Source of the DNA: Fimbriosthenelais zetlandica
Taxonomy: Eukaryota
Assembly (NCBI GenBank): GCA_977030845.1
Contig: OZ365115.1
Coordinates: 2,728,001 to 2,792,000 of the forward strand
DNA length: 64,000 nucleotides
Reading direction: 5' to 3'
Part shown: positions 4,413 through 51,736 of the stretch, piece after piece
How positions within the stretch are numbered: position 1 is the first letter of the stretch
Layout: every line of letters begins with the position of its first letter
Notes under the pieces: generated by a model
Databases searched by the model: none
What the model was told of the DNA's origin: nothing
What the model saw: the letters and a program-made list of their open reading frames with translations, nothing else
Translations under genes and position numbers: made by a program

Positions 4413-5092
4413 AAGCTGAAGCCTGTCCAGGTAGGAAATCCTACCTGGTGCAATATTTGTTAGAATATAAACTGCAAGTCATATTTTTTGAGGTTATATC
4501 ATTGTTGGACTTATTAGCTCAGTTCTTCTTATCTTTCTTCCTATCATTGCAGAGAATGGACGCACAATGTATGGCTGATCAAAGATAAGCCATTGAAATC
4601 GCCTAAACTAATGTTTGCCAAATAAAAGACTACTTGAATACATCGGTAATTTGTATATTCACGATTTATTGACTCCATTTGTTCTGCAAATAGGTGCGTA
4701 CTTTATTACCCATGAATTATCATGGAATCGGATGATTTATACTCTTTCATAATTTGTTCTCCGACATCTGAACTATGCTACTGTAGCATTTAACTCTATG
4801 GAAGGACCAAGCCAGCGCGACTGTAGCGACCCCAGATATGATGTGAGAGAACGCTGAACTATGCTACTGTAGCATTGAACTCTATGGAAGGACCAAGCCA
4901 GCGCGACTGTAGCGACCCCAGATATGATGCGGCAGAACGGTGAACTATGCTACTATAGCATTGAACTCCGGGCACTTGCGCAATGAAACATGAAACCATA
5001 ATAGCTAATTACTGTTTGGGGTGGAGGTTGGGGCTCTGTGATTTGGCCTTTGAACAGGTTAAATTTGACGGGGTGTAAGGTAGAGACCTATG

Positions 5093-5173
5093 AGCCAGGT
5101 AGTCTAGAGGTAAGACACTGGACTCTAAGACGAGAGACCGGGGTTCGATTCCCCGTCTTGTAAATCCCTTTTC
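5093..5173 (+). ncRNA. tRNA-like Pol III cassette 1, CUA at the anticodon position (5125-5127)
   Basis: A box TAGTCTAGAGG, D stem GTCT/AGAC, B box GGTTCGATTCC, T5 at 5169-5173; anticodon stem 3/5 paired, acceptor stem about 5/7. Confidence 0.55.
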
Positions 5174-5365
5174 GCTGCTGGATTACTACACATATACGGC
5201 TGTGGAAGTAAGTGTTCATTTGGCAGAGGATCTTTTGGATAGCAGAAGCAGACATAGCTTGGTTCCCGCCTGGTCGTACAGGTGGCGCTAGGGGTGCTGG
5301 GTGAGGTCGCTGAAGAAGCTCACAGTCATCATATAAATGTGTAGGCCGAGCGACCCATGGAGCAG

Positions 5366-5445
5366 AAAAATGTTTGAATCGACGGAGAATTGAACCCCGG
5401 TCGCTCACGTTGAATGTCAGTGTCTTACCTCTAGACTAATGGCAG
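5366..5445 (-). ncRNA. tRNA-like Pol III cassette 2, UCA at the anticodon position
   Basis: A box TAGTCTAGAGG, B box GGTTCAATTCT, T5 terminator; no acceptor stem. Confidence 0.5.
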
Positions 5446-6370
5446 AACGATGAAGAATGGTACATGCAGTATGATCAAGCTAGGTCTCATGCTTCTCAAT
5501 GCTTCATTGCGCAAGTGCCCGGATCAGGCGCTCGCATACTTCCGCCTCTCACGACTGGAATCAAGCTAAACATGAAATAGAGGAGGGTGTCATTTTCTGT
5601 CTGACAAGGACGTGAACAATCTGTGTCACGACTCTGATTTCGAAAATCTTTAATATCTCGGCAACTACTGGGTCTTTATAAGAAATTCAAAATGGAAAAT
5701 CTTAGTTGGGACAATGTCTAGCGGGTCGTATAGGAAATACATGTTGAAATAGCTTCTAAAAATTTCGATTTTCAAAATATAGCTAATTTCACAAGGTGTC
5801 CCGACTCCAGCCCTTTTTGCAGTCCAAACCAGCGCGACTGTAGCGCACCCGAGATATGATGTGGGAGAACGCTGAACTATGCTACTATAGCATTGAACTC
5901 TATGGAAGGACCAAGCCAGCGCGACTGTAGCGACCAGACATATGATGCGGCAGAATGGTGAACTATGCTTATTCAGCTGAGTTCAGAGCCTTGGATTGGA
6001 AACGGGACTGGAGTCGGGACACCTTGTGAAATTAGCAACATTTTGAAAATCTAAATTTTTAGAAGCCGTTTCAGCATTTAATACCTATACCACCCACTAG
6101 ACATTTTCCCAACTAAGATTTTCCATTTTGAATTTCTTATAAAGACCCCGTGGTTGCCGAGATATTAAAGATTTTCGTAATCAGAGTCGTGACACAGATT
6201 GTTCACGTCCTTGTCCGACGGAAAATGACACCCTCCTCTATTTTATGTTTAGCTTGATTCTAGTCGTGAGAGCCGGAAGTATGCGAGCGCCTGATCCGGG
6301 CACTTGCGCAATGAAGCATGAAGTTATAATAGCTTTACTGTTTCTATTGGGTGTAGAGTCTTGTCCTGTG

Positions 6371-6451
6371 ACCGATGTAGTCTAGAGGTAACACACTGGC
6401 CTGCAGCGCTAGCGACCGGGGTTCGATTCCCAGTCAAAGCCCACATTTTTC
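6371..6451 (+). ncRNA. tRNA-like Pol III cassette 3, GCA at the anticodon position (6403-6405)
   Basis: A box, anticodon stem CTGGC/GCTAG, B box GGTTCGATTCC, T6; no acceptor stem. Confidence 0.55.
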
Positions 6452-6661
6452 TGCTCCATAATTATTTATTCGGTTCCAATATACATAATTATAGCATATA
6501 TGTCCAAGCTTAGATATATTCTTATGTCTGGATTGCGGCTTCGCGGCGTCTCATCTTCCTGTCCTCTTCCATCTCCGCCTCCAATACCACACCCCTTCAG
6601 CGCCCCTCAATCTGGCTCAGCGAAGCACCTAAATAATTACGTAGCGACCTCTATGGAGCAG

Positions 6662-6741
6662 AAAAATAGCGGTTTAGACTGGGAATCGAACCCGGGTCGC
6701 TGACATGGCACGCCAGTGTCTTACCACTAGACTACATAGTG
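6662..6741 (-). ncRNA. tRNA-like Pol III cassette 4, GCC at the anticodon position
   Basis: A box TAGTCTAGTGG, perfect D stem, anticodon stem CTGGC/GTCAG, B box, T5; no acceptor stem. Confidence 0.55.
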
Positions 6742-7900
6742 GACAGGTTTGTACCTCAATCTGACAATAACAACAATGGAGCTATTATGGTTTCATGCTT
6801 CATTGCGCAAGTGCCCGGATCAGGCGCTCGCATACTTCCGGCTCTCACGACTAGAATCAAGCTAAACATGAGATAGAGGAGGGTGTCATTTTCCGTCTGA
6901 CAAGGACGTGAACAATCTGTGTCACGACTCTGATTTCGAAAATCTTTAATATCTCGGCAACCACTGGGGTTTTTTAAGAAATTCAAAATGGAAAATCTTA
7001 GTTGGGAAAATGTCTAGCGGGTAGTATAGGAAATAAATGCTGAAACGGCTTCTAAAAATTTCGATTTCCAAAATGTTGCTAATTTCACAAGGTGCCCCGA
7101 CTCCAGCCCCGTTTCCAATCCAAGGCTCTGACCTCAGGTGAATAAGCATAGTTCACCGTTCTGCCGCATCATATCTGGGGTGCGCTACAGTCGCGCTGGC
7201 TTGGTCCTTCAATAGAGTTCAATGCTATAGTAGCATAGTTCACCGTTCTGCCGCATCATATCTGGGGTGCGCTACAGTCGCGCTGTCTTGGTCCTTCCAT
7301 AGAGTTCAATGCTATAGTAGCATAGTTCACCGTTCTGCGGCATCATATCTGGGGTGCGCTACAGTCGCGCTGGCTTGGTCAGAGAGAGTGAGAGAGGGAG
7401 GGATGTAGTTCACCTTGTGGCCGCTGCAAATCCTGAGGGCGCAACTGTGCCGGTTATTCAGCTGAGATCGGAGCCTTGGATTGGAAACGGGGCTGTAGTC
7501 GGGGCACCTTGTGAAATTAGCTATATTTTGATAATCGAAATTTTTAGAAGCTGTTTCGGCATTTAATATCTATACCACCCGCTAGACATTTTCCCAACTA
7601 AGATTTTCCATTTTGAATTTCTTAAAAAGACCCAGTGGTTGCCGAGATATTAAAGATTTTCGAAATCAGAGTCGTGACACAGATTGTTCACGTCCTTGTC
7701 CGACGGAAAATGACACCCTCCTCTATTTCATGTTTAGCTTGATTCCAGTCGTGGGAGCCGGAAGTATGCGAGCGCCTGATCCGGGCACTTGCGCAATGAA
7801 GCATGAAACCATAATAGCTTTACTGTTTGGGTGGAGGTTGGGGCTCTGTGATTTGGGCGGTTCAGGTTAAATTTGACGGGGTGTAAGGTATAGACATATG

Positions 7901-7980
7901 AGCCAGGTAGTCTAGAGGTAAGACACTGGACTCTAACACGAGAGACCGGGGTTCGATTCCCAGTCTTGTAAATCCCTTTT
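7901..7980 (+). ncRNA. tRNA-like Pol III cassette 5, CUA at the anticodon position (7933-7935); near-copy of cassette 1
   Basis: A box, B box and T4 at 7977-7980; flanks match those of cassette 1. Confidence 0.55.
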
Positions 7981-8284
7981 CGCTGCTGGATTACCACATA
8001 TACACTAGCCGTGTGAAATCCAAGCAATCACAACAAGTATCGACTCTAGGCGGCACCTGGTGTCGAGATCTGGCGTGAGACGGGAGCGATGACTGTTAGC
8101 CTTGCTCTGCGACTTCACTGAATACCCATAGCGCCACCTGTACGACCAGGCGGGAACCAAGCTATGTTTGCTGCTGCTATCGAAAAGATCCCCTGTCAAA
8201 TGAACACTTCTCAGCCGTACTTGTGTACTCTCTCCTCTACAAGTCCCCAGTTGTGAATACAGGACTGATAAATTGGACATGGTA

Positions 8285-9711
8285 TTTATTTATCGGAAAG
8301 TATTTGTTTATTTAGGAGGGTTTATAATGTGGGTCTTACTGAAACTTTAATCTAAAAACAGTGCTTTGGATACCGCAGATTAAACGACGGGCATAGAAAT
8401 AAATTACATCGGAAATAATTGAACGTAGAACTAAGATTAATTAAAACATATTTTTAATGTAATAGCACCTTAGAAGTTCATATACAATATGTGACCATAT
8501 GAATGCAATATCAGAATTAATCATTGACATGATTGTATAATTTCAACACATGCTGAATATATTCATCTCTGACTAAATATTTGCAATAATAACACTTTGC
8601 AACATTTGAGAATTACATTATTTACAAATCATGCATTGTGTATATGACTTTGGAGATATATTTAAGACTTCGGGAGGAGGTATTCCAATGGATATTTACA
8701 ATTTTAGGTTACACCATGCAAGTAGAAATAGGATGAAATATAACTGTTAATACAACCTCTCCTCCCTCAAATCTTTATAATTTATCATAAAATATAAGGT
8801 AATAATTGTATTTTACACATGGAGCAGACCTTGGATAGGCTATACACGAACATTTAATCACATTAAAGGCAAATTGATCACGTATTATTAAAAACTCATT
8901 TTAGCAGAATAATGACTGCACTGAATCTATCCCAAGTTTGGGTTTAGATCCACTGAGGTCTTAAGCGCAGAAGATAATGCTCCCAGGAACGGGATTAAAT
9001 GTACTAAAATCAAGAAATATGAAGATTCCTATTAAAACCAGCCTTAGAAGACCGAAGTTCTTAAACCCTTAAGATCTCAGTGGACCTATGATCTACTTCT
9101 ATCTCAGCAGCTATTTAAGAATATGAAAGACAATGTTCATGTTGGCTCTAGGGTCAAAGTTCATGTACCAATATTACATAATCCCACGCTCAACCAGTTA
9201 CTCTATGCCCACAGGAGGTAAGATCTAACTTTGCTCTCTTTAATACAATATTTTACATTTTAATGCTCTGAATGACTACAAGGTAATGGATATAGATTAT
9301 ACAGTATAAAATGGTACATAGATTATCAGAGTCACTGGGATGGGGGTAGATAATGCCTTGAAATAACCCTGCTTTCTTCACGTAACCCTTCAATAGATAT
9401 GTACACCGCCATTACTTTGTTAAATTTCATCATGTACATGTAATATATAATTAATTATAATTATCTCTATTATTTGTACATTTCTAGATACATTTGGATT
9501 ATTTCAGGCATACATGTCAACATACTCAGGAAGAAATGAAGAATATAAATCAATCTGAAGAACTACTATCTGTTCACTCTCCTCAGAACATCTCCTTAAA
9601 TTAAAATAATTGCACACTATTTTTCCTGAATAAACCTGTCACTAAACGATAAGAATGTCATAAAATAGATGCAGGTTTTAAGTAAGTGTACACGTCACTA
9701 GTGTTCAGTAA
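8285..9711 (-). other. Probable 3' UTR of the THSD7-like gene
   Basis: AT-rich stretch after the stop; AATAAA on the minus strand near 8285-8310. Confidence 0.4.
8945..9088. mobile_element. Small MITE-like element, probably Tc1/mariner-type, in the 3' UTR
   Basis: Inverted ends tagatccactgaggtcttaag (8945-8965) and cttaagatctcagtggaccta (9068-9088), 19/21 complementary, TA at both ends. Confidence 0.55.
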
Positions 9712-10674
9712 TTAAGCCTTGGCCATCGTCTCCAGTTCTTGCAGCAACTCGTCACAGTATTCCATCAATCGATGGCCCGCTTCATTGGGTCCTTGTTGGT
9801 CCTCCAGCCGAGGTGGCGGCTGAGGGTACCTCAGTCCTGTAGGAGTCAAAGCTCCTTGATTTCTAAGCAGATTAGGATCATCTTCTTGAGATGACATATC
9901 ACTGTTTGGAATATGACCATTTGAAGCGCCTTTACTAGGTCCGTGAACATTTGACAGTTTCTCAGGCGGTTCATTGTCGTCACTATAAGTTTGCCCACCT
10001 TCAGATCTCTGCCTTTGAACCCTCTGTAAAGGCCTCCCGTTCATGACAGGTTTAGGTTTGATGGGAGGTTTATTTTGAGGTTTGTTGTTTGTACCTCCAG
10101 TGTTTGTATTTTTCACACCGTCGTTTGTTTGGTTCTGTTGTTGAGGGGACAGCTCTGGTTTCTCGTCCCCGGCTTGTGGGAACCAGACTTTCTTCGGAGG
10201 TTTGGGAAGTGTACGTAGATTATTGTTATCCTGCATTTTCCAGGGATTAGCGTTGCTTTTGGTTCTGTTGTGTTGTCTGGGGAGGGACCTGGAGGAGCCC
10301 GGGGCATCGACATTAGATGGCTGCGGGGCCTTCCGTGGGTTCACCCCGCCAGGCCTGCTGCGGGGACCGGAGGAGTTAGGCGGGGGAAGTGGCGGTGCCC
10401 GGCGGTTACTGCCCCGCCCAAATGTCCCCATCTGAGGGAGGCCAGGGCTGGGGGACGGTCTCCCACTACTGCTGCTACTGCTACTCCCATAGGCGCTGGG
10501 GAAGTGGCTTTTGGGTGTCCCCGGGGAGGTGGAGTTGGTGGAGGTGGAGGTGGAACCATCGCCGGGAGAGTTAGAGCCGAACATGGGGACATAGTCAGGA
10601 TCCTCCATCAGAGGTTTAGTGGAGGAGTCGCTATGACTACCGAACAGGTCATCATCCGGGTCCAGCAGGCACAT
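9712..10674 (-). CDS. THSD7-like terminal exon, 320-aa Pro/Ser-rich cytoplasmic tail
   Basis: Acceptor tgtgttgtag right before a 963-nt ORF with coding-like GC content; TAA at 9712-9714. Confidence 0.78.
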   Translation of the reverse strand: MCLLDPDDDLFGSHSDSSTKPLMEDPDYVPMFGSNSPGDGSTSTSTNSTSPGTPKSHFPSAYGSSSSSSSGRPSPSPGLPQMGTFGRGSNRRAPPLPPPNSSGPRSRPGGVNPRKAPQPSNVDAPGSSRSLPRQHNRTKSNANPWKMQDNNNLRTLPKPPKKVWFPQAGDEKPELSPQQQNQTNDGVKNTNTGGTNNKPQNKPPIKPKPVMNGRPLQRVQRQRSEGGQTYSDDNEPPEKLSNVHGPSKGASNGHIPNSDMSSQEDDPNLLRNQGALTPTGLRYPQPPPRLEDQQGPNEAGHRLMEYCDELLQELETMAKA

Positions 10675-13600: not shown

Positions 13601-16600
13601 ACAAAGGTGATGCTTGTGTCGCAATAAACTTTATAAATTGTGTCTGAAGTGTGCAAGGCTTTAAGGCCGTTTTCCATGCACTAGTACAGACTTTGTCTCA
13701 ATAGTGTCGCACGTAAAGTGGCAGCAGTGAAAAGCATCCTGAAGAAACTCACCCGTCTAGAGTTAGGTAGGAGCAGAGTTTAATGACATGTTTAATACAG
13801 GTAGTAGTTATACAGGTACATACCTGTGAATCCGAGCATACAGGTACAGGTACCGTCAGTACACCTGGCATACTGACCACACTGCTGACCACACACCCTG
13901 GTCATCCCAGGCTCATCACCATCCTCACATCCTCCACTCACCTCCAGGTGTTCTATAATAACAATCATAATAATAATCAATAACAAATAAAGATAAAACA
14001 GGTGAAATAAACGTGCAATGACAGTCATGCATCAAGTCTGAAAAGTCCGAACTGACGAAACAACTGAACAAGACCATATTGAAAATGAATTTTATGACGA
14101 TTTATTTTTCCACGACTTTCGACATATTTTCAAACAAATCGAATTTCCCCAGCTTTATTCTTCAGCTTTATCTTAAATTGCATGAATTAATCAAATGATT
14201 CACTCACCGTGAGCCATACAGTGGACCTTCCTCCTGCCCTTCTTGTTCCACTCACCACTCTGCCAGTAGAAGGTGGGACATAGTACCTCATTCTGTCTAC
14301 AGGGCCGCACCTCCATCAGATGACTGGGACAGGCACGCCCTCCTGTGGCTGGAGAGAGAACTACACGCGTTCTAACCTGAATGGACACCGCGCCAGGCGT
14401 GGCGCAGTCCTTAAAGCAAGGCCCGTACCTACTCCACGTGCTTACCTACAAATTAAAGCGGCTCTATCACCAAAACTGCCCCTGCATAGAGAGTCATCTG
14501 AAGTTTAAATTTAGCTCCTTTTTATCCACTGGATAATCACACACAAAATTAGGAGTTGAAACCTGGAACTGAAACCTACCACACAGTCACCGGGGCAAGG
14601 CTGTCCACATATCTCCTCGTCTTCAAGGTCAAGTTCCTTACGGATGTAAGGGTCAAGGTCACTCAGGCTCTGAATGGGGTCATCTGAAAATAAAATGATA
14701 CAAAAATAAAATAGATGGAAACGAAATAAATAGAAAGGAAGGACGGATGGATGGAAGTCAGGAAAGAAGTTGGGGTTCAACTAATTTGAACGTCAACTGA
14801 TTTAAACGTCTACTGATTTAAGTAACTTATTAATTGATGAACTTCATCTCTTCATCTGATCAGACATAATATGAGTAAATGCACGGCGATACAACTCTAT
14901 AAAACATTCTTATTACCTCTAATTGACTACTCTCTTTTCTGTTTTAATGTGTGTCCGGCTCATATGTTCATAAAACTCCAGAGACTGCAGAATAGGGCTC
15001 TACGTATTTGTACCTTATCCAATAAAACCACGCCAACCATTGCTCTCCATAAGGCGGCAAACCTGCTCACCCTTGATTACAGAGCCAAGTTTAATCTATT
15101 AAAAAACGCCCATCGGTTCATATATGTCGATCAGTGTGCTACCAACTATATCGTCGATCATGGTGTCCCAACTAGAATAAATGCTGCTCCTCTTTTAAAG
15201 CTTCCCATCCCTATCTCATCATTTGTCTCGAAATCACTCCCATTTACCTCTGTCGATACTTGGAATTCACTTCCTGTTGCCCTACGAATTATTGCTGATC
15301 CGGATTGCTTTAAATCCCGGTTAAAAGCCTACCTCACCCAAAATTGTTTTCCTGACTAAAAATCTGTATCCGATTTCCATATTTCCACTTGTTGGTCTGC
15401 TTCCTTTATGTACTCATCACTCTATATATCAATGTGATCTGTTCCTCATCTTACCCACCCCAACTATTGTGTCTGCAAGTACGCCTAATTCACCATATGA
15501 ATGTGTTGATCTCAATACACGTTTAAATTGTACATATTATTGTAAATATTGATGTATATATTATGTTCCATGTCTGCATGTTGTCAAGTTGTCTAACATA
15601 TTCCGTTTTCTCACCTTGACATAATCTGTGTGTAATTTGTAAATTGTGAATTGTGTTAATCTGTATGTCGTTGTTATGTCTGTTGTGCGTGTTTCCTTGG
15701 ATGAATAAGTGTATATATATACCCGGTAATGCCTGAATCCCGCATGACTCCTAACTCTTTATAACTGACTAGCTGTTGACATCCTGACTTTTAAACATAT
15801 CGCTTACTTTTAAACTGCATATTGAAATCTAATTGTTCAATATTTTTACTCATGTCCTCGATGCATCTATTTTTTCCCCTCTATGTATGTGGTCAGGAAG
15901 TGGTCGGAAGACCAGGGTCATTGTAACCTGAGGCCACTTGTTGTATATTGATCTTGTTATATGCACCTCCTGAATAAATTAGATGTAACAAAAAAAAAAA
16001 AAAAAAAAATGAACTCACCCGGATTGAAGCAGTTAGCCTCGTCTGAGACCATACCATCACTGCGGACACACTGCACGACTCTGGTCCTCAGGTCGACACC
16101 ACAGCTGGACTCCGCTACGCTACACTCCCCCCACCTCCCCCGCTCCCAACTATACGCGTAGCAAGGCGTCGTATGACACGTCGTGTTCTAATAAAAACAT
16201 CAATAATTCATAAATAATTCACACTAAAACATAACACAATATGATGTCTATGGTATGGTACAGTGTTCACTCTCTCTATGAAAAACATTATATTTGGTCT
16301 ATTCTTCAGATTAAATAGCTATGCTTTTCATAATCCTAGCAATTTTTTTTAGATATTTAAAAGGATATTTATATAATATGTCTGGGATAAATATTGATTA
16401 GATTCATTCCTTGATCAAAGAACGCAGGGGGAATGTGTGAGAGGCATGTGGTGTATCATTAACACAAGGTGGCGTGAGTGTGCCTACTTTTAACCATGAA
16501 CCAACGCTTCAATAGGCCCTACTCTCACAGACATCTGAGAGAAGGATCTACATTCTTGCGATTAAAATGATTGCAAAGACACAAAAAAGTCTTTCCATAC

Positions 16601-19600
16601 GTAATATAACATTAAAAAGACACCAGAGTGGCACTAATGATACTATATTGTACTCTTGGTTTCACGTGTGAGTTTCAGATGTTATTTTCTCAGTGCTCAC
16701 CTGGACTAGCTGGTCCTCAGTGGGACAGGGACGCCCCCATGTGTTGGCGGTGGTGAGTACGCTTCTCAGCCGCTCCTTGTACGCCTCCAGACCGCACTCC
16801 GCGGAACAGTGAGACCAGGGTGTGAACTTAGACACCTCACAGTCCACGGGGCACGGCGACTCACACTCCTCCTCACTAAAAATAAAAAACAAACTTTAAA
16901 CAATTATATAATTATTGTTATAAAACAATTGTGAGAGACCAAAGTGTATACAGGAGGAATACTCGTTGGAGAGACTAAACTTTTCCAGTAAGTTGAATTG
17001 AAATGATAAATTTTACGAGATAACCAATGGGATTGGAAATTATTACAAACATAAAGTATAGTTATAGGATGCGTAAAGTGTTTGCTGCATTAACCAATTG
17101 ACAGTTTAAGACCTGGAAGGATACTGAGATGTTACTGGGGACACTTATTAGATGGTGCTATAGACACAGACTTAGATCTATCTATATAATTTGAAATTTA
17201 GATTTGATAAAACTATTTTCTACCTTGGTTCTGTGTTGGGGAAGTCTTTACAATACTCCATATCCACGACTACTCCATCCTCTCTCACACAGTTGAAGGA
17301 ACGCTTCCTCACGCCTGAAATATAAAATAATTATGATGCAGGTGAAGCACACATCTTCCTTAACACGACTAACACAATTTAAAACACAAAAGCAAGTCAG
17401 AATTCTTAAACATTTAAAGGTCAGTCTCCGATAATTGTTTGGTAAAATCTAGATCTAAGAGATGATACAATAGTAGAGCACATGAGCGCTGGATAGACGC
17501 CTAGAGCTCTCTCAATCTGTGGCTTTGATATCTACTCTTGGAACTATCTATTCATATTGGACACAACCGTTACGGAACTATTGTTTTATTTGATCTCGCT
17601 GGTCTGTTATTTCTGTGATATTCTGTCTGAGAACATTTGTCTGTTTGAGAACATTTCTTTTACTTGGCCACTATTATGGTCTCTGAAAGTCCTAACATCA
17701 ATGAATAGATTCAAACATTTGCCGATGAATCGAGCAGTATATGAAATTCATAATGAATTGACAAAGTTAATAAGGACTGAATGAGCTCACCTTGACCACA
17801 CTTGTTCCTGTTATCGTCCTTGATGAGACAGCTCGTCCAGTCACCCATCACTATACTATAGAGAGGACAGTAACATGGCTCCTCCTCCTCCAGATCCCCA
17901 CACTGGAACGCGCTAGGTAACGGCTCCTTGGTAACGTTACGGTAACGAGCACGTGTGGCGTTAGGACGGCAGCTACACTTAGTCCACTCACTCCACCCAC
18001 TCACCTCACAGTCGCCTACAACACAATAGTTGTTATTATAAAACACTAATTCCATTGAAGGTTCAAGTTAGAAATTCATTAAACTATTTTTCATTTTTCG
18101 CCGACTAAATTATCTGGAAAAGTGTTGCGACTTCTGCAACTGCTGCAAGTGTAACTGCACTAGCAGGGGCTTCCTCTTCCTGACAATAGTTAATATTATA
18201 AAACACTAATTCCATTGAAGTTTCAAGTTTCATTTTTCCGGCTATATCATCTGGAGAAGTGGTGCAACTGCTGCAACTGTAACTGCACTAGCAGGGGCTT
18301 CCTTTTCGTGAGGGAATGACTGGGGAATGACTTACCGAGACAGGGTAGATCACATTCTACTGTATCTAGAGGTCTAGGTTTGATTCTCTCACACTCCTCC
18401 TCATACTCCGCCCCGGCCCGGCACGTCACCGCTCTCTTCATCTCACCACGACCACAAATAATGTCATAAAACGGTCGACACTCTCCCCACTGAAAATGAC
18501 AGACTTAGTATGGCAATAGGCACGAAAAACAGAGATAGGGTTAAGTCTAGAGGTATTGAGGATGTGAAATTAACCTGAACTTGATTATTCATCCAGAATA
18601 AGTGTAGGTAGAGACTGAGCGTTCCGCTATGGGAGATGTAATAGGTCAGCTTAAATTACATGAAAGACAAAGGAGTAAAGCATATCACTGGATGAAATCC
18701 GATGTGGGATGGGGACATGTTACCAGAAGTTTGAAATAGGAATCAGGCTATTGTCTTGAAACTAATACTGCAATTCCATCATCCATTTTTATAGAATATC
18801 CAGAGAAAAAATGTATAAGCCTGAAAAAATGTATATGCCTCTCACCACAGACAGTGGGAGATACGGCTGGCTTTTGATATGCCAGTTAGCAGCACTGGGC
18901 AGAGAAGGACTTTTGAATAATTAGTAATGATTTATAGTAGGTCTTACAGGAGCAGCTTTCCATTCAAACATGCCACATTCTCTGAGAATACATGTCCTGT
19001 TCTCCACCAGATGGGGACACGGCCGACCACCAGGTGTCATGGCAACCGTGACGTCACGCCTCCGACTCTGAACACCTGGCGGAGAAAACAGAAAAAAACA
19101 ATCAGAAACTTTAAACAACTAATTCAAAAGTGGCTCTATCACTAGTAGTGTCCTATTTACAGTTCATAATAACCTAGAACCTAGAGTTAAACAGTATGAA
19201 TCTGGATCATACTGACCTACACCCACCACAAGCCTATCACTGATCGCTTTAAGACCAAACTACTTTGTGTAAATCAATTTTCTCCTTAGAAAGTAAACTT
19301 ATCTGCAACGTAATCCAAATAAATGAGAATGATAAGGAAAGAGCCTGGTTGCCGATAACCTAGTTATATATAGACCTAAGCACACCTTGTTTCCCCAAAC
19401 CGATGTAAAAAGAAGTAAATCGTTATAGAGGCGGGAGAAAAAGTAATGAATAAAACACACAGGGGACCGAGGTCCGCCAACTGATGTATTATGATGGGGA
19501 GAGACAGAAGGAAGACAAACTTGCTCCCCTCTCAAACTCCATTTCTTATTTGCTTAGGTTCTATTAACCGCCACCTGAGCCCTAGTCTGAGCTTTTTATC

Positions 19601-22600
19601 AGCAAGAATCGATTTTTCAAATCATCAATTGACATAAAAATATTGTAATTCCGTGACATATTTGCCTTATCAATCTACATTAAACTGGAAGTGGTTGCTT
19701 CTTGGATTCATCTATTTACATACCACGCTCACACAGATGATTTCTCAAATTCTTTCTGGCGTTCTTTCATTTCTTTTTCAACTGGGAGCTCTTTCTCCGT
19801 GTACTGCTATTATCTGTTGTTTTCTACTATTATTTATTGACTTCTGCAAGAGAACAGCTTGCGAAATCACAGTAGGAAAGAATTGTGGTCGCCATGCGGA
19901 TTCTGCAAGCTATTCACATGAAATCAGCTTCTCCTATGTAACGCTCACTTTGCAAATCCCATTAATCCATACAGTCATAGAACATACTCAATTGTCAGTC
20001 TTCAATGCTTGGGACATCCACATCACTTCTGTAATGGAATTTTTTAAAAAAGTACAAATAGAAAATATCTAGCAGACATGGAGATGTAAATCACCTTGGC
20101 CACAGACAGCTGAACAGGAATCCCAATCAGACCAGTCAGAAAGTTGGCAATCTTGAGGGCAGGAGATGCTACAAGGCACGTGTTTCTCTGGAGTCATGAC
20201 AACCGCGTCACAATGATGGTGAGGCACCTGCACGCCATCTGTTCGCTGGCAAATGACGTGACGCCGGCGGATACCGTGACCACAATGCAACAGCTCGTCT
20301 GGAAGGACATTGACAAGAAAGGAGAGAGAGTTAGAACTTCCTGAAAGTAGTTCCCACAGAGAAAGTAGTCCTGCATACCGGAAGTGTAGAGGGAGAGGAC
20401 TGTGGGAAGATATTTGAATTATCTGAGCAGGTAGAGGCAGCTCGGATGCTTTTGACAAAATGCTGGTTATTGCATTGATATATTAGACCAATAGGTCTAC
20501 TTAATTATATTAGCAAACGATATATTCTTCCACTAAATTACTGCAAGTGTTCAGCAGCCGAAATGCTGACAAAATGTATTATTGACCTTTGTGCATCTGT
20601 TGTTAGGGCTAATGCATCAGACACCTTGGTCTGGGCCTACATTAATCATGTGCACTACATAGTAAGATAGTTTTAATGAAGATAGTACCTTGAGCATCCT
20701 TCCTGTGAACTATACAGCTGCCCCAATCACCAATCACCCAGGAGTAGACGGGGCAGGGCTCAATCCCACAATCCAGTGTCTCTACCAGGTCAGACGGGTG
20801 GAGGTGAGGGCACTGCACCTCAGCCGTCAGTCCTGGCTCTGAAAAATAACAAATATCAGTCTTTAGTTTGTGAACTTATAGGTAATCCCTTACATAGTCT
20901 ATAATACCTTGTGAGAATGTTTGTCTTTGGCGGAATCCAGAACATTACATTAATAGGAGCAGGGAGTCACTGAAAATGCTTTGGATTGATCGGGGATTGA
21001 ACCACCAAACACTCAATCACTGAAATCAACTCAGCTGTTTGCCATTCAAATGGTCACAAAATATTAAATGTGAGAGTGTGATTATATAACCAACATAGCC
21101 TTATAAAGCTCTGACCACATAACAAATGGTAAGAGATAATAACAGATGAAGACCTCTATATTATACTGACCAAGTTTAGTGATATATCTGGTCCTGGTCT
21201 TGGTGCCTGGAGTCTTGCCGCAGGTCTGAGGACAGCTGGACCACCTGGACCAGGGTGATAACTGGCAGTCTCCAGAACATGGGAGGAAACATGGCTGGTC
21301 AGTCCGCGGTGGTGAACCGGGGGCCTGCTCATAACATATAGCTGTAAAGACAAGACAATTAAAATAAAGACAAATAATACAATTAAAATAAAGACAAAGT
21401 AATTTCATGTGTAATACCGATCTTCTACTATTACCGTAGATAACTAAGATAGCAGTTTTGGTAGCTTAAACGGGGCCTACACTATCACGATAAGCAACTA
21501 ATATAGTAGTTAAAAATTCAACTATTTCTGTCAAATATTACATTAATACAAAAAATAAGAAACAGATACCGATTCATTGATGATTTCTCCTACTAGAGAA
21601 AGGGTTGAACATTTCTGTTTTCTGAAAATAAAGAGATAATTTGAAGTTAAGATAATACCCACCGTCTCTGACTGGCTTGCCATCACTTCTCACACACGAG
21701 ACGTTCCTCTCCTGGCCGCCATAGCCACATGTCGCCACCATCAGGCAGGCAGACCAGCCCGAGGCTTCCCAGTGAAACGTGTGACAATCCGGAACCTTCT
21801 TACACCGTTTCTTCTGTAATATCACTCCTGAAATAAAGAACATCAGTAAATTAAAAAGTTAACATACCCAGGAAACCATTTTCTATACATGTAGAGGAAA
21901 ACAACAATGGTTTGAATATATCCTCATGAAACCTAATAATATAAAAAACATGCACAGATTGGTCCATGAGAGCAGTCTGAGGGAGGAAAGAAAGGTTGGG
22001 GAAGTAACAGCACACCATGGCCTTTCACAGGAAAAGGCCATGGGGATTCTTATTAACCAAAGGTATATAGATGAGCTATAAGAGACTAGCTAAAGTTCTG
22101 ATTATTGTCTGAGATACGACCCTGTCACATGATATGGGGGCAGGGGGCAGGGGTCAGGGGTCAGGGGCCAGGGGGCAGGGGGCAGGGGGCAGGGGGCAGG
22201 GGGCATGGGGCAGGGGCCAGGGAGAAGGATCCATCTGTACAGGCATAAGTATTTAATGATATGTTTCTATCGACCTAAGTAAAGCAATAATGGGCCGGCG
22301 CAGGCTGGCGGAGTAAAACGAAAAGAAAAGGGTAATAAACTTAAAAAAACATGTATTATTTTCAAGCCAGAAATGAAATGATGCAACAATTGAAGGGAGA
22401 AGTCAGCAATCGAGATCTACTTCTACATAATATGAACCCCATAACACATCCAAGTATGTGACTGACACATATAACCAAAATAACGCCCCTACTACCATGG
22501 GATAAATTGGAGGACAAAAGTAGGAAATTTGGCAAGAATTGTAAATCTTCAATATCTAAAGTATATCATTATGATTTGGTACACTAATAGGGCACACCCT

Positions 22601-25600
22601 AGGGATAATTGCCTGCTGATTCTTGCAGTGATTCATGCCAGTGGGACCTGTCTACAAGACAATAGGTGAAAAGTTCATAAATTCCAGCCAGAAATGAAAT
22701 GCTGCAACAATTGAAGGGAAAAGTCAGCAATCGAGATCTACATCTACATAATATGAACTGCACCACACATCCAAGTATGTGACTGAAACATATAACCAAA
22801 ATAACGCCCCTACTACAACAGGAGAAATTGGAGGACAAAAGTAGGAAATTTGGCAAGAATTGTAAATCTTCAATATCTAAAGGATATCTTTATGATTTGG
22901 TAGATTAATAGGGAACACCCTAGGGACAATTGCCTGCTGATTCTTGCAGTGATTCATGCTAGTGGGACCTGTCTACAAGACCATAGGTGAAAAGTTCATA
23001 AATTCCAGCCAGAAATGAAATGCTTCAACAATTGAAGGGAAAGGTCAGCAATCGAGATCTACATCTACATAATATGAACCCCACCACACATCCAAGTATG
23101 TGACTGACACATATAACCAAAATAACGCCCCTACTACAACAGGAGAAATTGGAGGACAAAAGTAGGAAATTTGGCAAGAATTGTAAATCTTCAATATCTA
23201 AAGTATATCATTATGATTTGGTACACTAATAGGGCACACCCTAGGGATAATTGCCTGCTGATTCTTGCAGTGATTCATGCCAGTGGGACCTGTCTACAAG
23301 ACCATAGGTGAAAAGTTCATAAATTCCAGCCAGAAATGAAATGCTTCAACAATTGAAGGGAAAGGTCAGCAATCGAGATCTACATCTACATAATATGAAC
23401 CCCACCACACATCCAAGTATGTGACTGACACATATAACCAAAATAACGCCCCTACTACCATGGGATAAATTGGAGGACAAAAGTAGGAAATTTGGCAAGA
23501 ATTGTAAATCTTCAATATCTAAAGTATATCATTATGATTTGGTACACTAATAGGGCACACCCTAGGGATAATTGCCTGCTGATTCTTGCAGTGATTCATG
23601 CCAGTGGGACCTGTCTACAAGACAATAGGTGAAAAGTTCATAAATTCCAGCCAGAAAAGAAATGATGCAACAATTGAAGGGAAAAGTCAGCAATCGAGAT
23701 CTACATCTACATAATATGAACTCCACCACACATCCAAGTATGTGACTGAAACATATAACCAAAATAACACCCCTACTACCATGAGATAAATTGGAGGCCA
23801 AAAGTAGGAAAATTTGCAAGAATTGTAAATCTTCAATATCGAAAGGATATCTTTATGATTTGGTACACTAATAGGGCACACCCTAGGGGTAATTGCCTGG
23901 TGATTCTTGCAGTGATTCATGCCAGTGGGACCTGTCTACAAGACAATAGGTGAAAAGTTCATAAATTCCAGCCAGAAATGAAATGATGCAATAATTGAAG
24001 GGAAAAGTCAGCAATCGAGATTTAGATCTACATAAAATGAACCCCACCACACATCCAAGTATGTGACTGACACAAATAACCAAAATAATGCTCCTACTAC
24101 AACAGGGGAAATTGGAGGACAAAAGTAGGAAATTTGGCAAGAATTGTAAATCTTCAATACCTAGAGTATATTCTTATGATTTGGTACATTAATAGGGCAC
24201 ACCCTAGGGATAATTGCCTGCTGATTCTTGCAGTGATTCATGCCAGTGGGACCTGTCTACAAGACCATAGGTCAAAAGTTCATAAATTCCAGGCAAAAAT
24301 GAAATGATGCAACAATTGAAGGGAAAAGTCAGCAATCGAGATTTAGATCTACATAATATGAACCCCACCACACATCCAAGTATGTGACTGACACATATAA
24401 CCAAAATAACGCCCCTACTACCATGGGATTAATTGGAGGACAAAAGTAGGAAACTTTGCAAGAATTGTAAATCTTCAATATCTAAAGTATATCATTATGA
24501 TTTGGTACACTAATAGGGCACACCCTAGGGATAATTGCCTGCTGATTCTTGCAGTGATTCATGCCAGTGGGACCTGTCTACAAGACAATAGATGAAAAGT
24601 TCATAAATTCCAGCCAGAAAAGAAATGATGCAACAATTGAAGGGAAAAGTCAGCAATCGAGATCTACATCTACATAATATGAACTCCACCACACATCCAA
24701 GTATGTGACTGAAACATATAACCAAAATAACGCCCCTACTACAACAGGAGAAATTGGAGGACAAAAGTAGGAAATTTGGCAAGAATTGTAAATCTTCAAT
24801 ATCTAAAGTATATCTTTATGATTTGGTACACTAATAGGGCACACCCTAGGGACAATTGCCTGCTGATTCTTGCAGTGATTCATGCCAGTGGGACCTGTCT
24901 ACAAGAACATAGGTGAAAAGTTCATAAATTCCAGCCAGAAATGAAATGCTGCAACAATTGAAGGGAAAAGTCAGCAATCGAGATCTACATCTACATAATA
25001 TGAACCCCACCACACATCCAAGTATGTGACTGACACATATAACCAAAATAACGCCCCTACTACCATGGGATAAATTGGAGGACAAAAGAAGGAAATTTGG
25101 CAAGAATTGTAAATCTTCAATATCTAAAGTATATCTTTATGATTTGGTACACTAATAGGGCACACCCTAGGGACAATTGCCTGCTGATTCTTGCAGTGAT
25201 TCATGCCAGTGGGACCTGTCTACAAGACCATAGATCAAAAGTTCATAAATTCCAGCCAGAAATGAAATGCTGCAACAATTGAAGGGAAAAGTCAGCAAAT
25301 GAGAACTACTTCTACATAATATGAACCCCACCACACATCCAAGTATGTGACTGACACATATAACTAAAATAATGAGCCTACTACAAGAGAAATTGGAGGA
25401 CAAGGGTAGGAAACTTGGCAAGAATTGTAAATCTTCAATATCTAAAGTATATCATTATGATTTGGTACACTAATAGGGCACACCCTAGGGATAATTGCCT
25501 GCTGATTCTTGCAGTGATTCATGCCAGTGGGACCTGTCTACAAGAACATAGGTGAAAAGTTCATAAATTCCAGCCAGAAATGAAATGCTGCAACAATTGA

Positions 25601-28600
25601 AGGGAAAAGTCAGCAATCGAGATCTACATCTACATAATATGAACCCCACCACACATCCAAGTATGTGACTGACACATATAACCAAAATAACGCCCCTACT
25701 ACAACAGTGGAAATTGGAGGACAAGGGTAGGAAACTTGGCAAGAATTGTAAATCTTCAATATCTAAAGTATATCATTATGATTTGGTACACTAATAGGGC
25801 ACACCCTAGGGATAATTGCCTGCTGATTCTTGCAGTGATTCATGCCAGTGGGACCTGTCTACAAGACCATAGGTGAAAAGTTCATAAATTCCAGCCAGAA
25901 ATGAAATGCTGCAACAATTGAAGGGAAAAGTCAGCAATCGAGATCTACATCTACATAATATGAACCCCACCACACATCCAAGTATGTGACTGACACATAT
26001 AACCAAAATAACGCCCCTACTACAACAGTGGAAATTGGAGGACAAGGGTAGGAAACTTGGCAAGAATTGTAAATCTTCAATATCTAAAGGATATCTTTAT
26101 GATTTGGTACACTAATAGGGCACACCCTAGGGATAATTGCCTGCTGATTCTTGCAGTGATTCATGCCAGTGGGACCTGTCTACAAGACCATAGATCAAAA
26201 GTTCATAAATTCCAGCCAGAAATGAAATGCTGCAACAATTGAAGGGAAAAGTCAGCAAATGAGAACTACTTCTACATAACATGAACCCCACCACACATCC
26301 AAGTATGTGACTGACACATATAACCAAAATAACGCCCCTACTACAACAGGGGAAATTGGAGGACAAAAGTAGGAAATTTGGCAAGAATTGTAAATCTTCA
26401 ATATCTAAAGTATATCCTTATGATTTGGTACACTAATAGGGCACACCCTAGGGATAATTGCCTGCTGATTCTTGCAGTGATTCATGCCAGTGGGACCTGT
26501 CTACAAGACCATAGGTCAAAAGTTCATAAATTCCAGGCAAAAATGAAATGCTGCAACGATTGAAGGGAAAAGTCAGCAATCGAGATTTAGATCTACATAA
26601 TATGAACCCCACCACACATCCAAGTATGTGACTGACACATATAACCAAAATAATGCCCCTACTACAACAGGGGAAATTGGAGGACAAAAGTAGGAAATTT
26701 GGCAAGAATTGTAAATCTTCAATATCTAAAGTATATCCTTATGATTTGGTACATTAATAGGGCACACCCTAGGGATAATTGCCTGCTGATTCTTGCAGTG
26801 ATTCATGCCAGTGGGACCTGTCTACAAGACAATAGGTGAAAAGTTCATAAATTCCAGCCAGAAATGAAATGCTTCAACAATTGAAGGGAAAAGTCAGCAA
26901 TCGAGATCTACATCTACATAATATAAACCCCACCACACATCCAAGTATGTGACTGACATGTATAACCAAAATAACGCCCCTACTACCATGGGATAAATTG
27001 GAGGACAAAAGTAGGAAATTTGGCAAGAATTGTAAATCTTCAATATCTAAAGTATATCTTTATGATTTGGTACACTAATAGGGCACACCCTAGGGAAAAT
27101 TGCCTGCTGATTCTTGCAGTGATTCATGCCACTGGGACCTGTCTACAAGGCCATAGGAGAAAAGTTCATAAATTCCAGCCAGAAATGAAATGCTTCAACA
27201 ATTGAAGGGAACGGTCAGCAATCGAGATCTACATCTACATAATATAAACCCCACCACACATCCAAGTATGTGACTGACATGTATAACCAAAATAACGCCC
27301 CTACTACCATGGGATAAATTGGAGGACAAAAGTAGGAAATTTGGCAAGAATTGTAAATCTTCAATATCTAAAGTATATCCTTATGATTTGGTACATTAAT
27401 AGGGCACACCCTAGGGATAATTGCCTGCTGATTCTTGCAGTGATTCATGCCAGTGGGACCTGTCTACAAGACCATAGATCAAAAGTTCATAAATTCCAGG
27501 CAAAAATGAAATGCTGCAACGATTGAAGGGAAAAGTCAGCAATCGAGATTTAGATCTACATAATATGAACCCCACCACACATCCAAGTATGTGACTGACA
27601 CATATAACCAAAATAATGCCCCTACTACAACAGGGGAAATTGGAGGACAAAAGTAGGAAATTTGGCAAGAATTGTAAATCTTCAATATCTAAAGTATATC
27701 CTTATGATTTGGTACATTAATAGGGCACACCCTAGGGATAATTGCCTGCTGATTCTTGCAGTGATTCATGCCAGTGGGACCTGTCTACAAGACCATAGGT
27801 CAAAAGTTCATAAATTCCAGCCAGAAATGAAATGATCCAATAATTGAAGGGAAAAGTCAGGAATCGAGATCTACATCTACATAATATGAACCCCACCACA
27901 CATCCAAGTATGTGACTGACAAATATAACCAAAATAACGCCCCTACTACAACAGGGGAAATTGGAGGACAAAAGTAGGAAATTTGGCAAGAATTGTAAAT
28001 CTTCAATATCTAAAGTATATCCTTATGATTTGGTACATTAATAGGGCACACCCTAGGGATAATTGCCTGCTGATTCTTGCAGTGATTCATGCCAGTGGGA
28101 CCTGTCTACAAGACCATAGGTCAAAAGTTCATAAATTCCAGCCAGAAATGAAATGATACAACAATTGAAGGGAAAAGTCAGCAATCAAGATCTACATCTT
28201 CATAATATGAACCCCACCACACATCCAAGTTTGTGACTGACACATATAACCAAAATAACACCCCTACTACAAGAAGAGAAATTTTTGGACAAAAGTAGGA
28301 AATTTGGCAAGAATTGTAAATCTTCAATATCTAAAGTATATCCTTATGATTTGGTACATTAATAGGGAACACCCTAGGGATAATTGCCTGCTGATTCTTG
28401 CAGTGATTCATGCTAGTGGGACCTGTCTACAAGACCATAGGTGAAAAGTTCATAAATTCCAGCCAGAAATGAAATGCTGCAACAATTGAAGGGAAAAGTC
28501 AGCAATCGAGATCTACATCTACATAATATGAACCCCACCACACATCCAAGTATGTGACTGACACATATAACCAAAATAACACCCCTACTACCATGGGATA

Positions 28601-44586: not shown

Positions 44587-45372
44587 CTACAACAAAAAAC
44601 ACAAGAAATTCCATTAAAAGAGCTTTACAAGGAAGAAGAATAATGAAAAGTTAAAATTTTAATCCAAAGTGGACCCCATTAGGATAATCAACAGCTAAGA
44701 GAATGCGTTCACAATCTTGTGGGTCAAAAACGTCTCGAATGTTTTAAAATGAAACGCAGAAATCAAATTACATTATTTCAAGTAGAGAAGTAAAAACATC
44801 CATTAGTCACGCGAGGCACTTTAATTTTAAACATCCGTGACTTTATCCTTTCTTCCTTAGAGGCAAAATTTAAGTGGAATTGTTTTAATCCAATTTACGT
44901 AATCTAATGAGAATTAACTTTAAACGATTTCTCCCCCGATCTACCATATATATAAGTGTAAAGACCATGGCGTGGCATTACATTTTGTATGACATAATAA
45001 TTATATTCACAATCCCGTACTATTTAGGAATATCACTGTCACAAGCTATTATTCAAAGACACAGGTGCCCATTTTTGTATCAGAAAAACCCATCTGTAGG
45101 CACCATTGACTCATAGAAGAAGTAATGTCCCCAAATGTGTCTCTGTAGTTGAGGTAGCGAGGTAAATCCCCTGGCCATTGACCTGGTCACGTTCAGTCGT
45201 GTTACGTTTAGACAGAACAAAACAGGTCAATTATCAGCAGATAGAGACTGGCGGGACTCAGTATTGTTACAGTCTTAAACCAGCCGGGTTCTCTAATGCA
45301 GGACACACACCAATCAGATACCTGTAACCATGCGTATTTCCCCTATAGGAAACATTCAAGCCCGGACCCCAC

Positions 45373-48236: not shown

Positions 48237-48560
48237 ACTCATTTATGTGAGCTACTGTATAGTGAAGGGTTTACTCATTTATGTGAGCTACTGTATAGTG
48301 AAGGGTTTACTCATTTCTGTGAGCTACTGTATAGTGAAGGGTGTACTCATTTCTGTGAGCTACTGTATAGTGAAGGGTGTACTCATTTCTGTGAGCTACT
48401 GTATAGTGAAGGGTTCACTCACTTATCTGGGCTACAGTATAATGAGCTCACATTGAAAGATTAACACTTATATATGAGCTACTACATAGTGAAAGTTGTA
48501 ACCAAGTATATGAGCTACTCTGTAGTCAAGAGTGTCACTTACTTAAGAGTGTAAAGCTAT
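48237..48560. repeat. 36-bp minisatellite (about 6 good copies plus diverged ones)
   Basis: actcatt(t/c)(a/c)tgtgagctactgtatagtgaaggg at 48237, 48273, 48309, 48345, 48381, 48417... Confidence 0.9.
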
Positions 48561-48579
48561 GCGAGTTACTATGCGAGTT

Positions 48580-51654: not shown

Positions 51655-51736
51655 GGGTAGGGGGTCGGGGGTCGGGGGTCGGGGGTCGGGGGTCGGGGGT
51701 CGGGGGTAGGGGGTCGGGGGTAGGGGGTGAGGGGTA
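51655..51736 (+). repeat. (GGGGTC/GGGGTA)n tract, G-quadruplex-prone
   Basis: Repeated G4-5 runs with 1-2 nt linkers. Confidence 0.85.

What the first reader, a model, noticed from the sequence alone, without database searches (positions are those of the whole stretch)
4769..8220. Flip-flop array of five tRNA-like Pol III cassettes, each behind a conserved arm
Seen: five modules alternate in orientation (+,-,+,-,+). Each reads arm B (~350 bp when complete; only its 3' end survives in module 1), a variable 50-100 nt linker, a tRNA-like cassette with A box and B box, then a T4-6 run. Cassettes converge in pairs across unique spacers, and back-to-back arms are joined by 86-87 bp tandem repeats. 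Arm B carries CCGGAAGT (ETS-type) and TTGCGCAA (C/EBP-type) motifs just upstream of every complete cassette. Established: A/B boxes plus a T-run define a type 2 Pol III unit, and tRNA-derived SINE heads normally lie 5' of the element body. Here the conserved body is upstream and transcription would stop ~15 nt after the cassette, which does not fit an ordinary SINE. Inference: this is a repeat or mobile family carrying small Pol III RNA genes in its arms, or a self-inverting array of small-RNA cassettes. I do not recognise it as a described family.
Basis: partly seen in the sequence, partly recalled or inferred. Interest (0 to 1): 0.8.

Follow-up and report, generated by a model that had tools for sequence, protein, structure and literature searches.

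The report
Nested palindromic repeat with tRNA-derived modules
A 3.4-kb stretch just downstream of an animal gene is a palindrome-within-palindrome made of one repeated module, whose tRNA-derived part keeps only its RNA polymerase III promoter boxes and stop signal; I could not show that it jumps or is transcribed.

Summary
Five tRNA-like cassettes (Rfam tRNA 24.7-38.4 bits, three above the gathering score; ARAGORN calls none) alternate +,-,+,-,+. Each follows a ~370-nt arm B or its 48-nt tail, and the arms are joined by 86/87-bp repeats.

The cassettes are not tRNA genes. They have no acceptor stem and fold no better than shuffled sequence. What is conserved is the A box, the B box, the T-run plus tip, and exact spacing (42 nt and 26-27 nt). 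The rest is close to randomised.

Arms (93.5-96%) and unit A (95-97%) are far more alike than the linkers and cassettes.

The array is best read as 2.5 copies of an asymmetric foldback unit: cassette(-), arm(-), A repeats, arm(+), cassette(+). Two copies, with a flanking segment S, form one 3-kb quasi-palindrome.

I found no target-site duplications, no other copy in the 64-kb window, and nothing in reachable collections, so mobility is not shown. Arm divergence argues against an assembly artefact.

The scan has flagged this theme before. At least 11 unchecked first-reader notes elsewhere in this genome describe foldbacks with tRNA-like units; none listed shows a follow-up. I found no published description, and Dfam/Repbase could not be searched.

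Verdict: a new variant of foldback-type repeats, of moderate interest.

The parts
4768..4968 (+). Unit A tandem array 1 (86 bp x 2.3), left edge of the structure
   Evidence: TRF; BLAST
4969..5014 (+). Tail of arm B (module 1). The rest of the arm is deleted at an A/B junction with 2-nt microhomology.
5093..5183 (+). Cassette 1: A box 5100-5110, B box 5142-5152, T4 at 5169-5172, tip to 5183
   Evidence: Rfam 38.4 bits
5187..5333 (+). Segment S(+), carrying a CTCF-like core at 5279-5288
   Evidence: (I7)
5357..5445 (-). Cassette 2: A box 5428-5438, B box 5386-5396, T5 at 5366-5370, tip at 5357
   Evidence: Rfam 27.4 bits
5482..5827 (-). Arm B2. It lacks its first ~25 nt and joins the A array on a CCAA microhomology (type-2 junction).
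5824..5969 (+). Unit A array 2 (1.7 copies), the asymmetric centre of foldback b
5970..6340 (+). Arm B3 (type-1 junction with A)
6371..6459 (+). Cassette 3: A box 6378-6388, B box 6420-6430, T5 at 6446-6450
   Evidence: Rfam 24.7 bits
6460..6652 (.). Unique spacer, the centre of the 3-kb quasi-palindrome
   Evidence: no other copy; centre inferred by me from the inverted pairs (I1, I10)
6653..6741 (-). Cassette 4: A box 6724-6734, B box 6682-6692, T5 at 6662-6666
   Evidence: Rfam 33.9 bits
6780..7144 (-). Arm B4 (type-1 junction with A)
7145..7380 (-). Unit A array 3 (87 bp x 2.7), in the opposite orientation to array 2
7381..7453 (-). AG-rich stretch plus a degenerate partial A unit that joins arm B5 (type-2 junction)
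7454..7819 (+). Arm B5
7901..7991 (+). Cassette 5: A box 7908-7918, B box 7950-7960, T4 at 7977-7980. With its linker it is about 96% identical to module 1.
   Evidence: Rfam 34.1 bits; (D6)
8088..8228 (-). Segment S(-), the inverted copy of 5187-5333 (87%), with a CTCF-like core at 8131-8140 and no cassette next to it

Best explanation
This is a local cluster of a modular, foldback-type (long inverted repeat) non-coding repeat.

The unit (shown). Its order is: outward-facing tRNA-derived Pol III module, variable linker, ~370-nt arm B, a central array of 86/87-bp repeats, then the same parts inverted. The centre is asymmetric. One arm meets the A array in sense ('type 1' junction) and the other meets it in antisense ('type 2' junction).

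The array (my reading of the repeats). There are 2.5 such units:
- a half unit at 4768-5183;
- unit b at 5357-6459;
- unit c at 6653-7991, which is unit b inverted.
Units b and c, together with the flanking segment S, form one ~3-kb quasi-palindrome. The +,-,+,-,+ alternation follows directly from nested inverted duplication.

How it was copied (inferred). Copying was at the DNA level, by inverted or fold-back duplication, with later recombination or gene conversion between modules. This accounts for the microhomology junctions, the missing target-site duplications and the mosaic similarity.

What the cassettes are (inferred). They are relics of a SINE-head or tRNA pseudogene. Selection, either here or in their source lineages, has kept only what Pol III and TFIIIC need: the A box, the B box, their spacing and a terminator. 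They probably still bind TFIIIC and could give ~80-90-nt transcripts. The RNA itself shows no sign of constraint.

Whether the unit also moves as a transposon elsewhere in the genome is open.
For: - Repeat structure, inverted pairs and tandem arrays.
- Two junction types, shared by units b and c in mirror order.
- S is duplicated in inverted orientation around b and c.
- Identity: arms 93.5-96% and A units 95-97%, against linkers 24-53% and mixed cassette windows.
- Among four non-redundant cassettes, 48 of 60 box/terminator columns are invariant against 3 of 31 other columns. Fisher p = 1e-10, with the blocks chosen after seeing the data.
- A-to-B spacing is 42 nt and B-to-T-run spacing 26-27 nt in all five cassettes.
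- No acceptor stem in the consensus fold, and the transcripts are no more stable than shuffles.
- No TSD at any boundary.
- At least 11 unchecked first-reader notes elsewhere in the genome describe foldbacks with tRNA-like units.
- Foldback elements with tandem repeats inside long TIRs, and many rearranged copies, are known, for example Tetris (PMC4079207).
Against: - No second locus could be examined, so 'family' rests only on unchecked notes.
- A simple inverted duplication predicts equal divergence along the arms. Yet cassettes 2 versus 5 and 3 versus 4 are only 76-81% alike, while their arms are 94-96% alike. Module 5's linker and cassette match module 1, not module 2. Extra events such as gene conversion or exchange have to be assumed.
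- The tandem repeats sit once in the centre rather than in both inverted arms as in classical foldback elements.
- No transposase, no TSD.
- No expression or occupancy data.
Confidence: 0.55

Rival explanations
1. The cluster is maintained for function. The five units would be working Pol III or TFIIIC sites (small-RNA genes, or tDNA-like boundary/insulator elements). Arm B would supply upstream control, and gene conversion would keep the arms alike.
For: - Boxes, terminator and exact spacing are retained in all five cassettes while neighbouring positions are near saturation.
- A T-run is kept in every copy.
- A convergent pair of CTCF-like cores in S brackets four of the units.
- tDNAs and TFIIIC sites acting as boundaries is established knowledge from yeast and mammals (from my own knowledge).
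Against: - There is no conserved RNA fold and no acceptor stem.
- The same box conservation is expected if the cassettes descend from different active SINE-like masters.
- The distance from arm end to A box is 43-45 nt in three modules but about 100 nt in two, so there is no fixed upstream promoter geometry.
- No RNA or ChIP data.
Confidence: 0.15
2. This is a purely local palindromic amplification of one tRNA pseudogene with its upstream flank. There would be no dispersed family and no mobility.
For: - No TSDs.
- Microhomology junctions.
- The flanking segment S was co-duplicated in inverted orientation.
- No other copy in 60 kb of neighbouring sequence.
Against: - Many first-reader notes describe similar tRNA-like plus foldback structures on other pieces of the genome (unchecked, and their arms may differ).
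- The four cassette types are far more diverged than the arms, which a single local history does not explain.
Confidence: 0.15
3. The arm-A-arm block is the mobile element, and it inserts a short distance upstream of Pol III units. The target choice would resemble that of Ty3 or the Dictyostelium TRE elements. It would have landed twice between older, divergent pairs of tRNA-like cassettes.
For: - Arms and A units are young (4-6% diverged) while the cassettes and linkers are old.
- The arm ends abruptly 43-45 nt before the A box in three modules.
Against: - Weak inverted homology continues from the arm into the linker, and there is no TSD at the arm ends.
- It requires a pre-existing alternating array of five old cassettes, which itself needs explaining.
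- Modules 1 and 5 have the arm end about 100 nt away.
- The known Pol III-targeting elements are retrotransposons (from my own knowledge).
Confidence: 0.1
4. It is an assembly artefact, or a chance nesting of an unrelated MITE and SINE.
For: Palindromes are a known failure mode of long-read assembly (from my own knowledge). No read data are available here.
Against: - Arms differ by 4-7%, with indels and different A copy numbers. The paired cassettes differ by about 20%. Artefactual fold-backs are exact copies.
- All 5 cassettes sit at the same junction with arm B, and neither part occurs alone in the window.
Confidence: 0.04

Closest known systems
Foldback-type DNA elements with internally repetitive long inverted repeats (Drosophila FB, Galileo, Tetris of D. 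virilis; PMC4079207)
   Same: - Non-coding, with long inverted arms of several hundred nt.
- Modular build with a variable number of tandem repeats.
- Many rearranged forms, and prone to inversions and nested structures.
   Different: - In Tetris the tandem repeats lie within both TIRs and complete copies have 8-10-bp TSDs. Here one A array sits in the centre in a single orientation and no TSD is seen.
- In the papers I could search I found no foldback element described as ending in tRNA-derived A-box/B-box/T-run modules.
tRNA-derived SINEs (head-body-tail retroposons transcribed by Pol III)
   Same: - The cassette has a SINE-head look: A and B boxes at tRNA spacing.
- The D, anticodon and T arms are recognisable and the acceptor stem is lost.
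   Different: - There is no body or LINE-type tail after the head; a T-run follows about 12 nt after the T arm.
- The conserved partner sequence (arm B) is upstream, outside any Pol III transcript.
- No solitary copies in 60 kb.
Helentron-derived HINE / 'pearl' elements of bivalves (tandem repeats carried between two flanking modules; PMC7492417)
   Same: A short satellite-like array embedded between conserved flanking modules in a (probably) lophotrochozoan genome.
   Different: - HINEs have different left and right flanks, with 11-12-bp subterminal inverted repeats, a microsatellite and a 3' palindrome.
- Here the flanks are the same ~370-nt arm inverted, with a tRNA-like module, and that signature is absent.
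tDNA / TFIIIC sites in inverted repeats that act as chromatin boundaries (for example the tRNA genes in the imr repeats of fission-yeast centromeres; from my own knowledge)
   Same: Pol III promoter units placed symmetrically in inverted repeats around a central domain.
   Different: Those are genuine tRNA genes in a fungus with a shown boundary function. Here they are degenerate tRNA-like units in an animal, with no functional data.

Membership tests
Functional tRNA gene | Cloverleaf with a paired 7-bp acceptor stem, called by tRNA finders | tested here: not met
   ARAGORN finds 0 genes. The Rfam hits are weak (24.7-38.4 bits), and three of the five align only to model positions 8-63. The consensus fold has no acceptor stem.
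Type 2 Pol III transcription unit | Internal A box and B box at tRNA-like spacing, followed by a T-run of at least 4 | tested here: met
   The A box (TAGTCTAGAGG; TAGTCTAGTGG in cassette 4) and the B box (GGTTCGATTCC in four, GGTTCAATTCT in one) start 42 nt apart. A T4-T5 run starts 26-27 nt after the B box in all five.
Type 2 Pol III transcription unit | Actual Pol III / TFIIIC occupancy and an RNA product | not testable with these tools
   No RNA-seq or ChIP data are available.
tRNA-derived SINE | Head followed by a body and a LINE-related or A-rich tail, dispersed copies flanked by TSDs, and nothing conserved upstream of the head | tested here: not met
   Homology ends about 10 nt after the T-run. 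The conserved arm B lies upstream. There are no solitary copies in the window.
Foldback-type DNA transposon | Long inverted arms that make up most of a non-coding element | tested here: met
   Inverted pairs of 329-417 nt at 92-94% complementarity, with 163-415 nt between them. Only short ORFs are present, with no homologues.
Foldback-type DNA transposon | Tandem sub-repeats inside the inverted arms | tested here: not met
   Tandem repeats are present. However, each unit has a single A array in one orientation, between the arms rather than in both of them.
Foldback-type DNA transposon | Target-site duplications at the ends of complete copies | tested here: not met
   No direct repeat of 6 nt or more at any of eight candidate boundary pairs, allowing +/-6 nt of slack.
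Foldback-type DNA transposon | Multiple dispersed copies in the genome; an autonomous partner with a transposase | not testable with these tools
   The genome is not searchable here. Scans of metagenome, genome and viral collections and two protein searches gave nothing usable. Only unchecked notes point to other loci.
Helentron-derived HINE | Distinct left and right flanks with short subterminal inverted repeats, a microsatellite and a 3' palindrome | tested here: not met
   The flanks of the A arrays are the same arm in inverted orientation. HINE features are taken from PMC7492417.

The most novel reading that the evidence does not exclude
The tRNA-derived TFIIIC/Pol III modules would be the working part of a genome-wide system, not passengers.
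- One possibility: they are the functional ends of a so-far undescribed kind of foldback transposon.
- The other: as Pol III-bound obstacles to replication forks, they nucleate fold-back (palindromic) duplication of whatever lies upstream.
The second would explain why foldbacks with unrelated arms in this genome are reported to share the same convergent cassette pair.
Probability: 0.15. Interest if true: 0.75.

Novelty: new variant of a known kind. Interest (0 to 1): 0.5.

Why it matters
If the module recurs across the genome, it would be a foldback-type repeat family that carries Pol III promoter units as a constant part. I found no such combination in the papers I could search.

It would give a handle on two questions:
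- how palindromic repeats grow and flip in animal genomes;
- whether TFIIIC-bound tRNA relics shape local chromatin or replication near genes (this array begins about 1.5 kb past the stop of a 320-aa ORF).

If it is private to this locus, it is an ordinary, if ornate, product of inverted duplication.

Tried and rejected
- **Searching for other copies.**
  - A 20-mer from arm B against metagenome contigs gave two hits that match only the 20-21 nt of the probe, in 52% and 62% GC contigs; I treat them as chance.
  - A 27-mer from arm B against prokaryotic genomes gave 0 hits.
  - A degenerate cassette pattern against viral contigs gave 0 hits.
  - Spurious ORFs across arm B and across cassette 5 were used as protein queries, hoping to find ORFs called on other copies. 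No candidates came back.
  - A look-up of earlier findings by sequence was blank.
- **Literature.** Five word searches and one search for sequence strings found no description of foldback elements ending in tRNA-like units. The one string hit was an unrelated 7SL paper.
- **Unit A beyond the tips.** I asked whether the sequence beyond the cassette tips is related to unit A, which would point to an old head-to-tail array. It is not significant (best p about 0.04 in one of five flanks).
- **The '191 nt' spacing.** The equal 191-nt gap in both convergent pairs comes from how the repeat arms were cut. A box to A box is 338 versus 356 nt.
- **A sixth cassette.** I looked for a degraded sixth cassette beside S(-) and found none.
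- **A fixed TATA-like upstream box.** The ATAATAGCT at the arm end is 43-45 nt from the A box in modules 3 and 4 and about 100 nt away in modules 1 and 5. Module 2 has a diverged sequence at that point.
- **Twin priming and Dada.** LINE-type twin priming is rejected because both arms carry the same region. Dada-type insertion into small-RNA genes is rejected because the cassettes are whole, not split. Both rejections are by reasoning, not by a test.
- **Naming the organism.** Only 'animal, probably lophotrochozoan' can be said, from other notes and the thrombospondin exons.
Full report
**1. What is there**

The sequence at 4768-8228 contains one module five times, in alternating orientation. 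In its own reading direction each module consists of:
- an array of 86/87-bp repeats (unit A);
- a ~370-nt arm B;
- a variable linker;
- a tRNA-like cassette;
- a T-run, followed by a short conserved tip.

The repeat finder reports the direct and inverted pairs. Tandem Repeats Finder reports the A arrays at 4768-4968 and 7145-7380. A BLAST of each part against the whole window adds the third A array at 5824-5969. It also shows that no part occurs anywhere else in the 64 kb.

An nhmmer profile built from the five cassettes finds only those five (E about 1e-27). The next best hit has E = 0.23.

**2. The cassettes**

The Rfam tRNA model hits all five, at 38.4, 27.4, 24.7, 33.9 and 34.1 bits. Three exceed the gathering score of 29, and they are the only Rfam hits in the window. 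ARAGORN calls no tRNA.

Three of the five align only to model positions 8-63, that is, without acceptor strands. The consensus fold of the five has D, anticodon and T arms but no acceptor stem. The predicted transcripts fold no better than shuffled sequence, with z from -0.3 to -1.6. They are therefore tRNA-derived, but they are not tRNA genes.

What is conserved is the Pol III signal set:
- The A box is TAGTCTAGAGG (TAGTCTAGTGG in cassette 4).
- The B box is GGTTCGATTCC in four cassettes and GGTTCAATTCT in one.
- The two boxes start exactly 42 nt apart in all five.
- A T4 or T5 run starts 26-27 nt after the B box in all five.

Among four non-redundant cassettes, 48 of 60 columns in the box and terminator blocks are invariant, against 3 of 31 elsewhere. 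Fisher p is 1e-10, and the blocks were chosen after looking, so this is descriptive.

One compensatory change (G-C to A-U) keeps the anticodon stem in cassette 2.

Homology between modules runs about 10 nt past the T-run, to a shared tip, and then stops.

**3. A mosaic of ages**

- Arms B are 93.5-96% identical in all pairs.
- A units are 95-97% identical.
- The last 50 nt of the arm are close to 100% identical.
- Identity then drops abruptly to 24-53% in the linker.
- Cassettes 2, 3, 4 and 1/5 are about 80% alike overall.
- The exception is module 1 against module 5: linker plus cassette are about 96% identical over about 230 nt.

A Pol III transcript cannot carry the upstream arm. The repeated arm-cassette association must therefore have been copied as DNA.

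**4. Architecture**

Two kinds of A/B junction exist:
- Type 1, in modules 3 and 4: A in sense runs straight into the start of arm B.
- Type 2, in modules 2 and 5: A in antisense meets arm B. In module 2 this lies on a CCAA microhomology, with the first ~25 nt of the arm missing.

So 5357-6459 (unit b) and 6653-7991 (unit c) are each a foldback with an asymmetric centre, and c is b inverted.

A 140-nt segment S lies left of b (5187-5333). It recurs inverted right of c (8088-8228, 87%), with no cassette beside it. Putting these inverted pairs together, I read the stretch 5187-8228 as one quasi-palindrome centred on the unique spacer 6460-6652.

Module 1 (4768-5183) is a half unit with most of arm B deleted.

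No candidate boundary shows a target-site duplication.

The arms differ by 4-7% and the A copy numbers differ. A technical fold-back artefact would give identical arms, so that is unlikely.

**5. Interpretation**

The simplest account is a foldback-type, non-coding repeat unit that has been duplicated locally in inverted orientation. Its modules have since exchanged sequence. Arms and A repeats may have been homogenised, or may be younger. The short cassettes, interrupted by variable positions, were not homogenised.

The cassettes look like SINE heads or tRNA pseudogenes in which only the promoter, its spacing and the terminator have been under selection. That selection could have acted here or in their source lineages. 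This makes TFIIIC binding and short Pol III transcripts plausible. It does not show them.

The rivals are set out with their tests in the Rival explanations section:
- a maintained Pol III/TFIIIC cluster;
- a private local amplification;
- an arm-A-arm element that targets Pol III units;
- an assembly artefact or chance nesting.

**6. Relation to what is known**

Foldback elements with internal tandem repeats and many rearranged copies are known. In Tetris the repeats lie within both TIRs and complete copies have 8-10-bp TSDs. Neither holds here.

HINE/pearl elements of bivalves carry tandem repeats between unlike flanks with a specific signature. That signature is absent here.

I found no paper describing foldback arms that end in tRNA-derived Pol III modules. 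Dfam and Repbase could not be searched.

**7. Other notes of this scan**

The same stretch was read once more as a '1.56-kb foldback' (s1-217086). That matches the inward-facing reading of 5824-7380.

At least 11 first-reader notes on other parts of this genome describe foldbacks with outward- or inward-facing tRNA-like units. One reports two unrelated foldbacks that share the same convergent cassette pair. None of the notes listed shows a follow-up, and I could not see their sequences. They raise the odds of a genome-wide phenomenon but are not evidence.

**8. Context**

The window is from an animal. Thrombospondin type 1 repeat exons lie on the minus strand between 17.7 and 44.6 kb. A 320-aa low-complexity ORF ends at 9712 on the minus strand. 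The array therefore begins about 1.5 kb downstream of that stop. Other notes suggest a lophotrochozoan.

Noticed in passing
window 5279-5288 (+) and 8131-8140 (-): The two inverted copies of segment S each carry CAGGTGGCGC, which by my own comparison fits the 3' ten positions of the CTCF core consensus. The two sites point towards each other and bracket cassettes 2-5. Other notes in this genome mention CTCF-like motifs next to tRNA-derived repeats.
   Followed up: partly
window 22361-29231: A 321-bp satellite, 21.4 copies at 95% identity, lies among the thrombospondin-repeat exons (probably intronic). A (GGGGGCA)n run at 22136-22222 sits just before it.
   Followed up: no
window 17711-18055, 20069-20458, 21082-21408, 33870-34226, 44336-44614 (all -): Exon-sized ORFs on the minus strand carry thrombospondin type 1 repeats. 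Four of them gave Pfam TSP1 hits; 21082-21408 was judged by eye only. I take them to belong to one large multi-TSP1 gene (THSD7-like by my guess).
   Followed up: partly
window 9712-10674 (-): A 320-aa Ser/Pro/Asn-rich ORF with no Pfam hit ends in a stop about 1.5 kb from the right edge of the array. It may be a terminal exon. An AATAAA on the minus strand near 8286-8300 would put a possible 3' UTR end right beside the array.
   Followed up: no
window 14871-15359 (+) and 48559-48972 (+): Two ORFs (162 and 137 aa) looked to me like C-terminal fragments of a retrotransposon protein, but Pfam gives no hit, so this is unconfirmed.
   Followed up: partly
window 51655-51737 and 56836-57011: G-rich minisatellites: (GGGTCGG)n at 51655-51737, and 34-bp GA-rich repeats at 56888-56975.
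   Followed up: no
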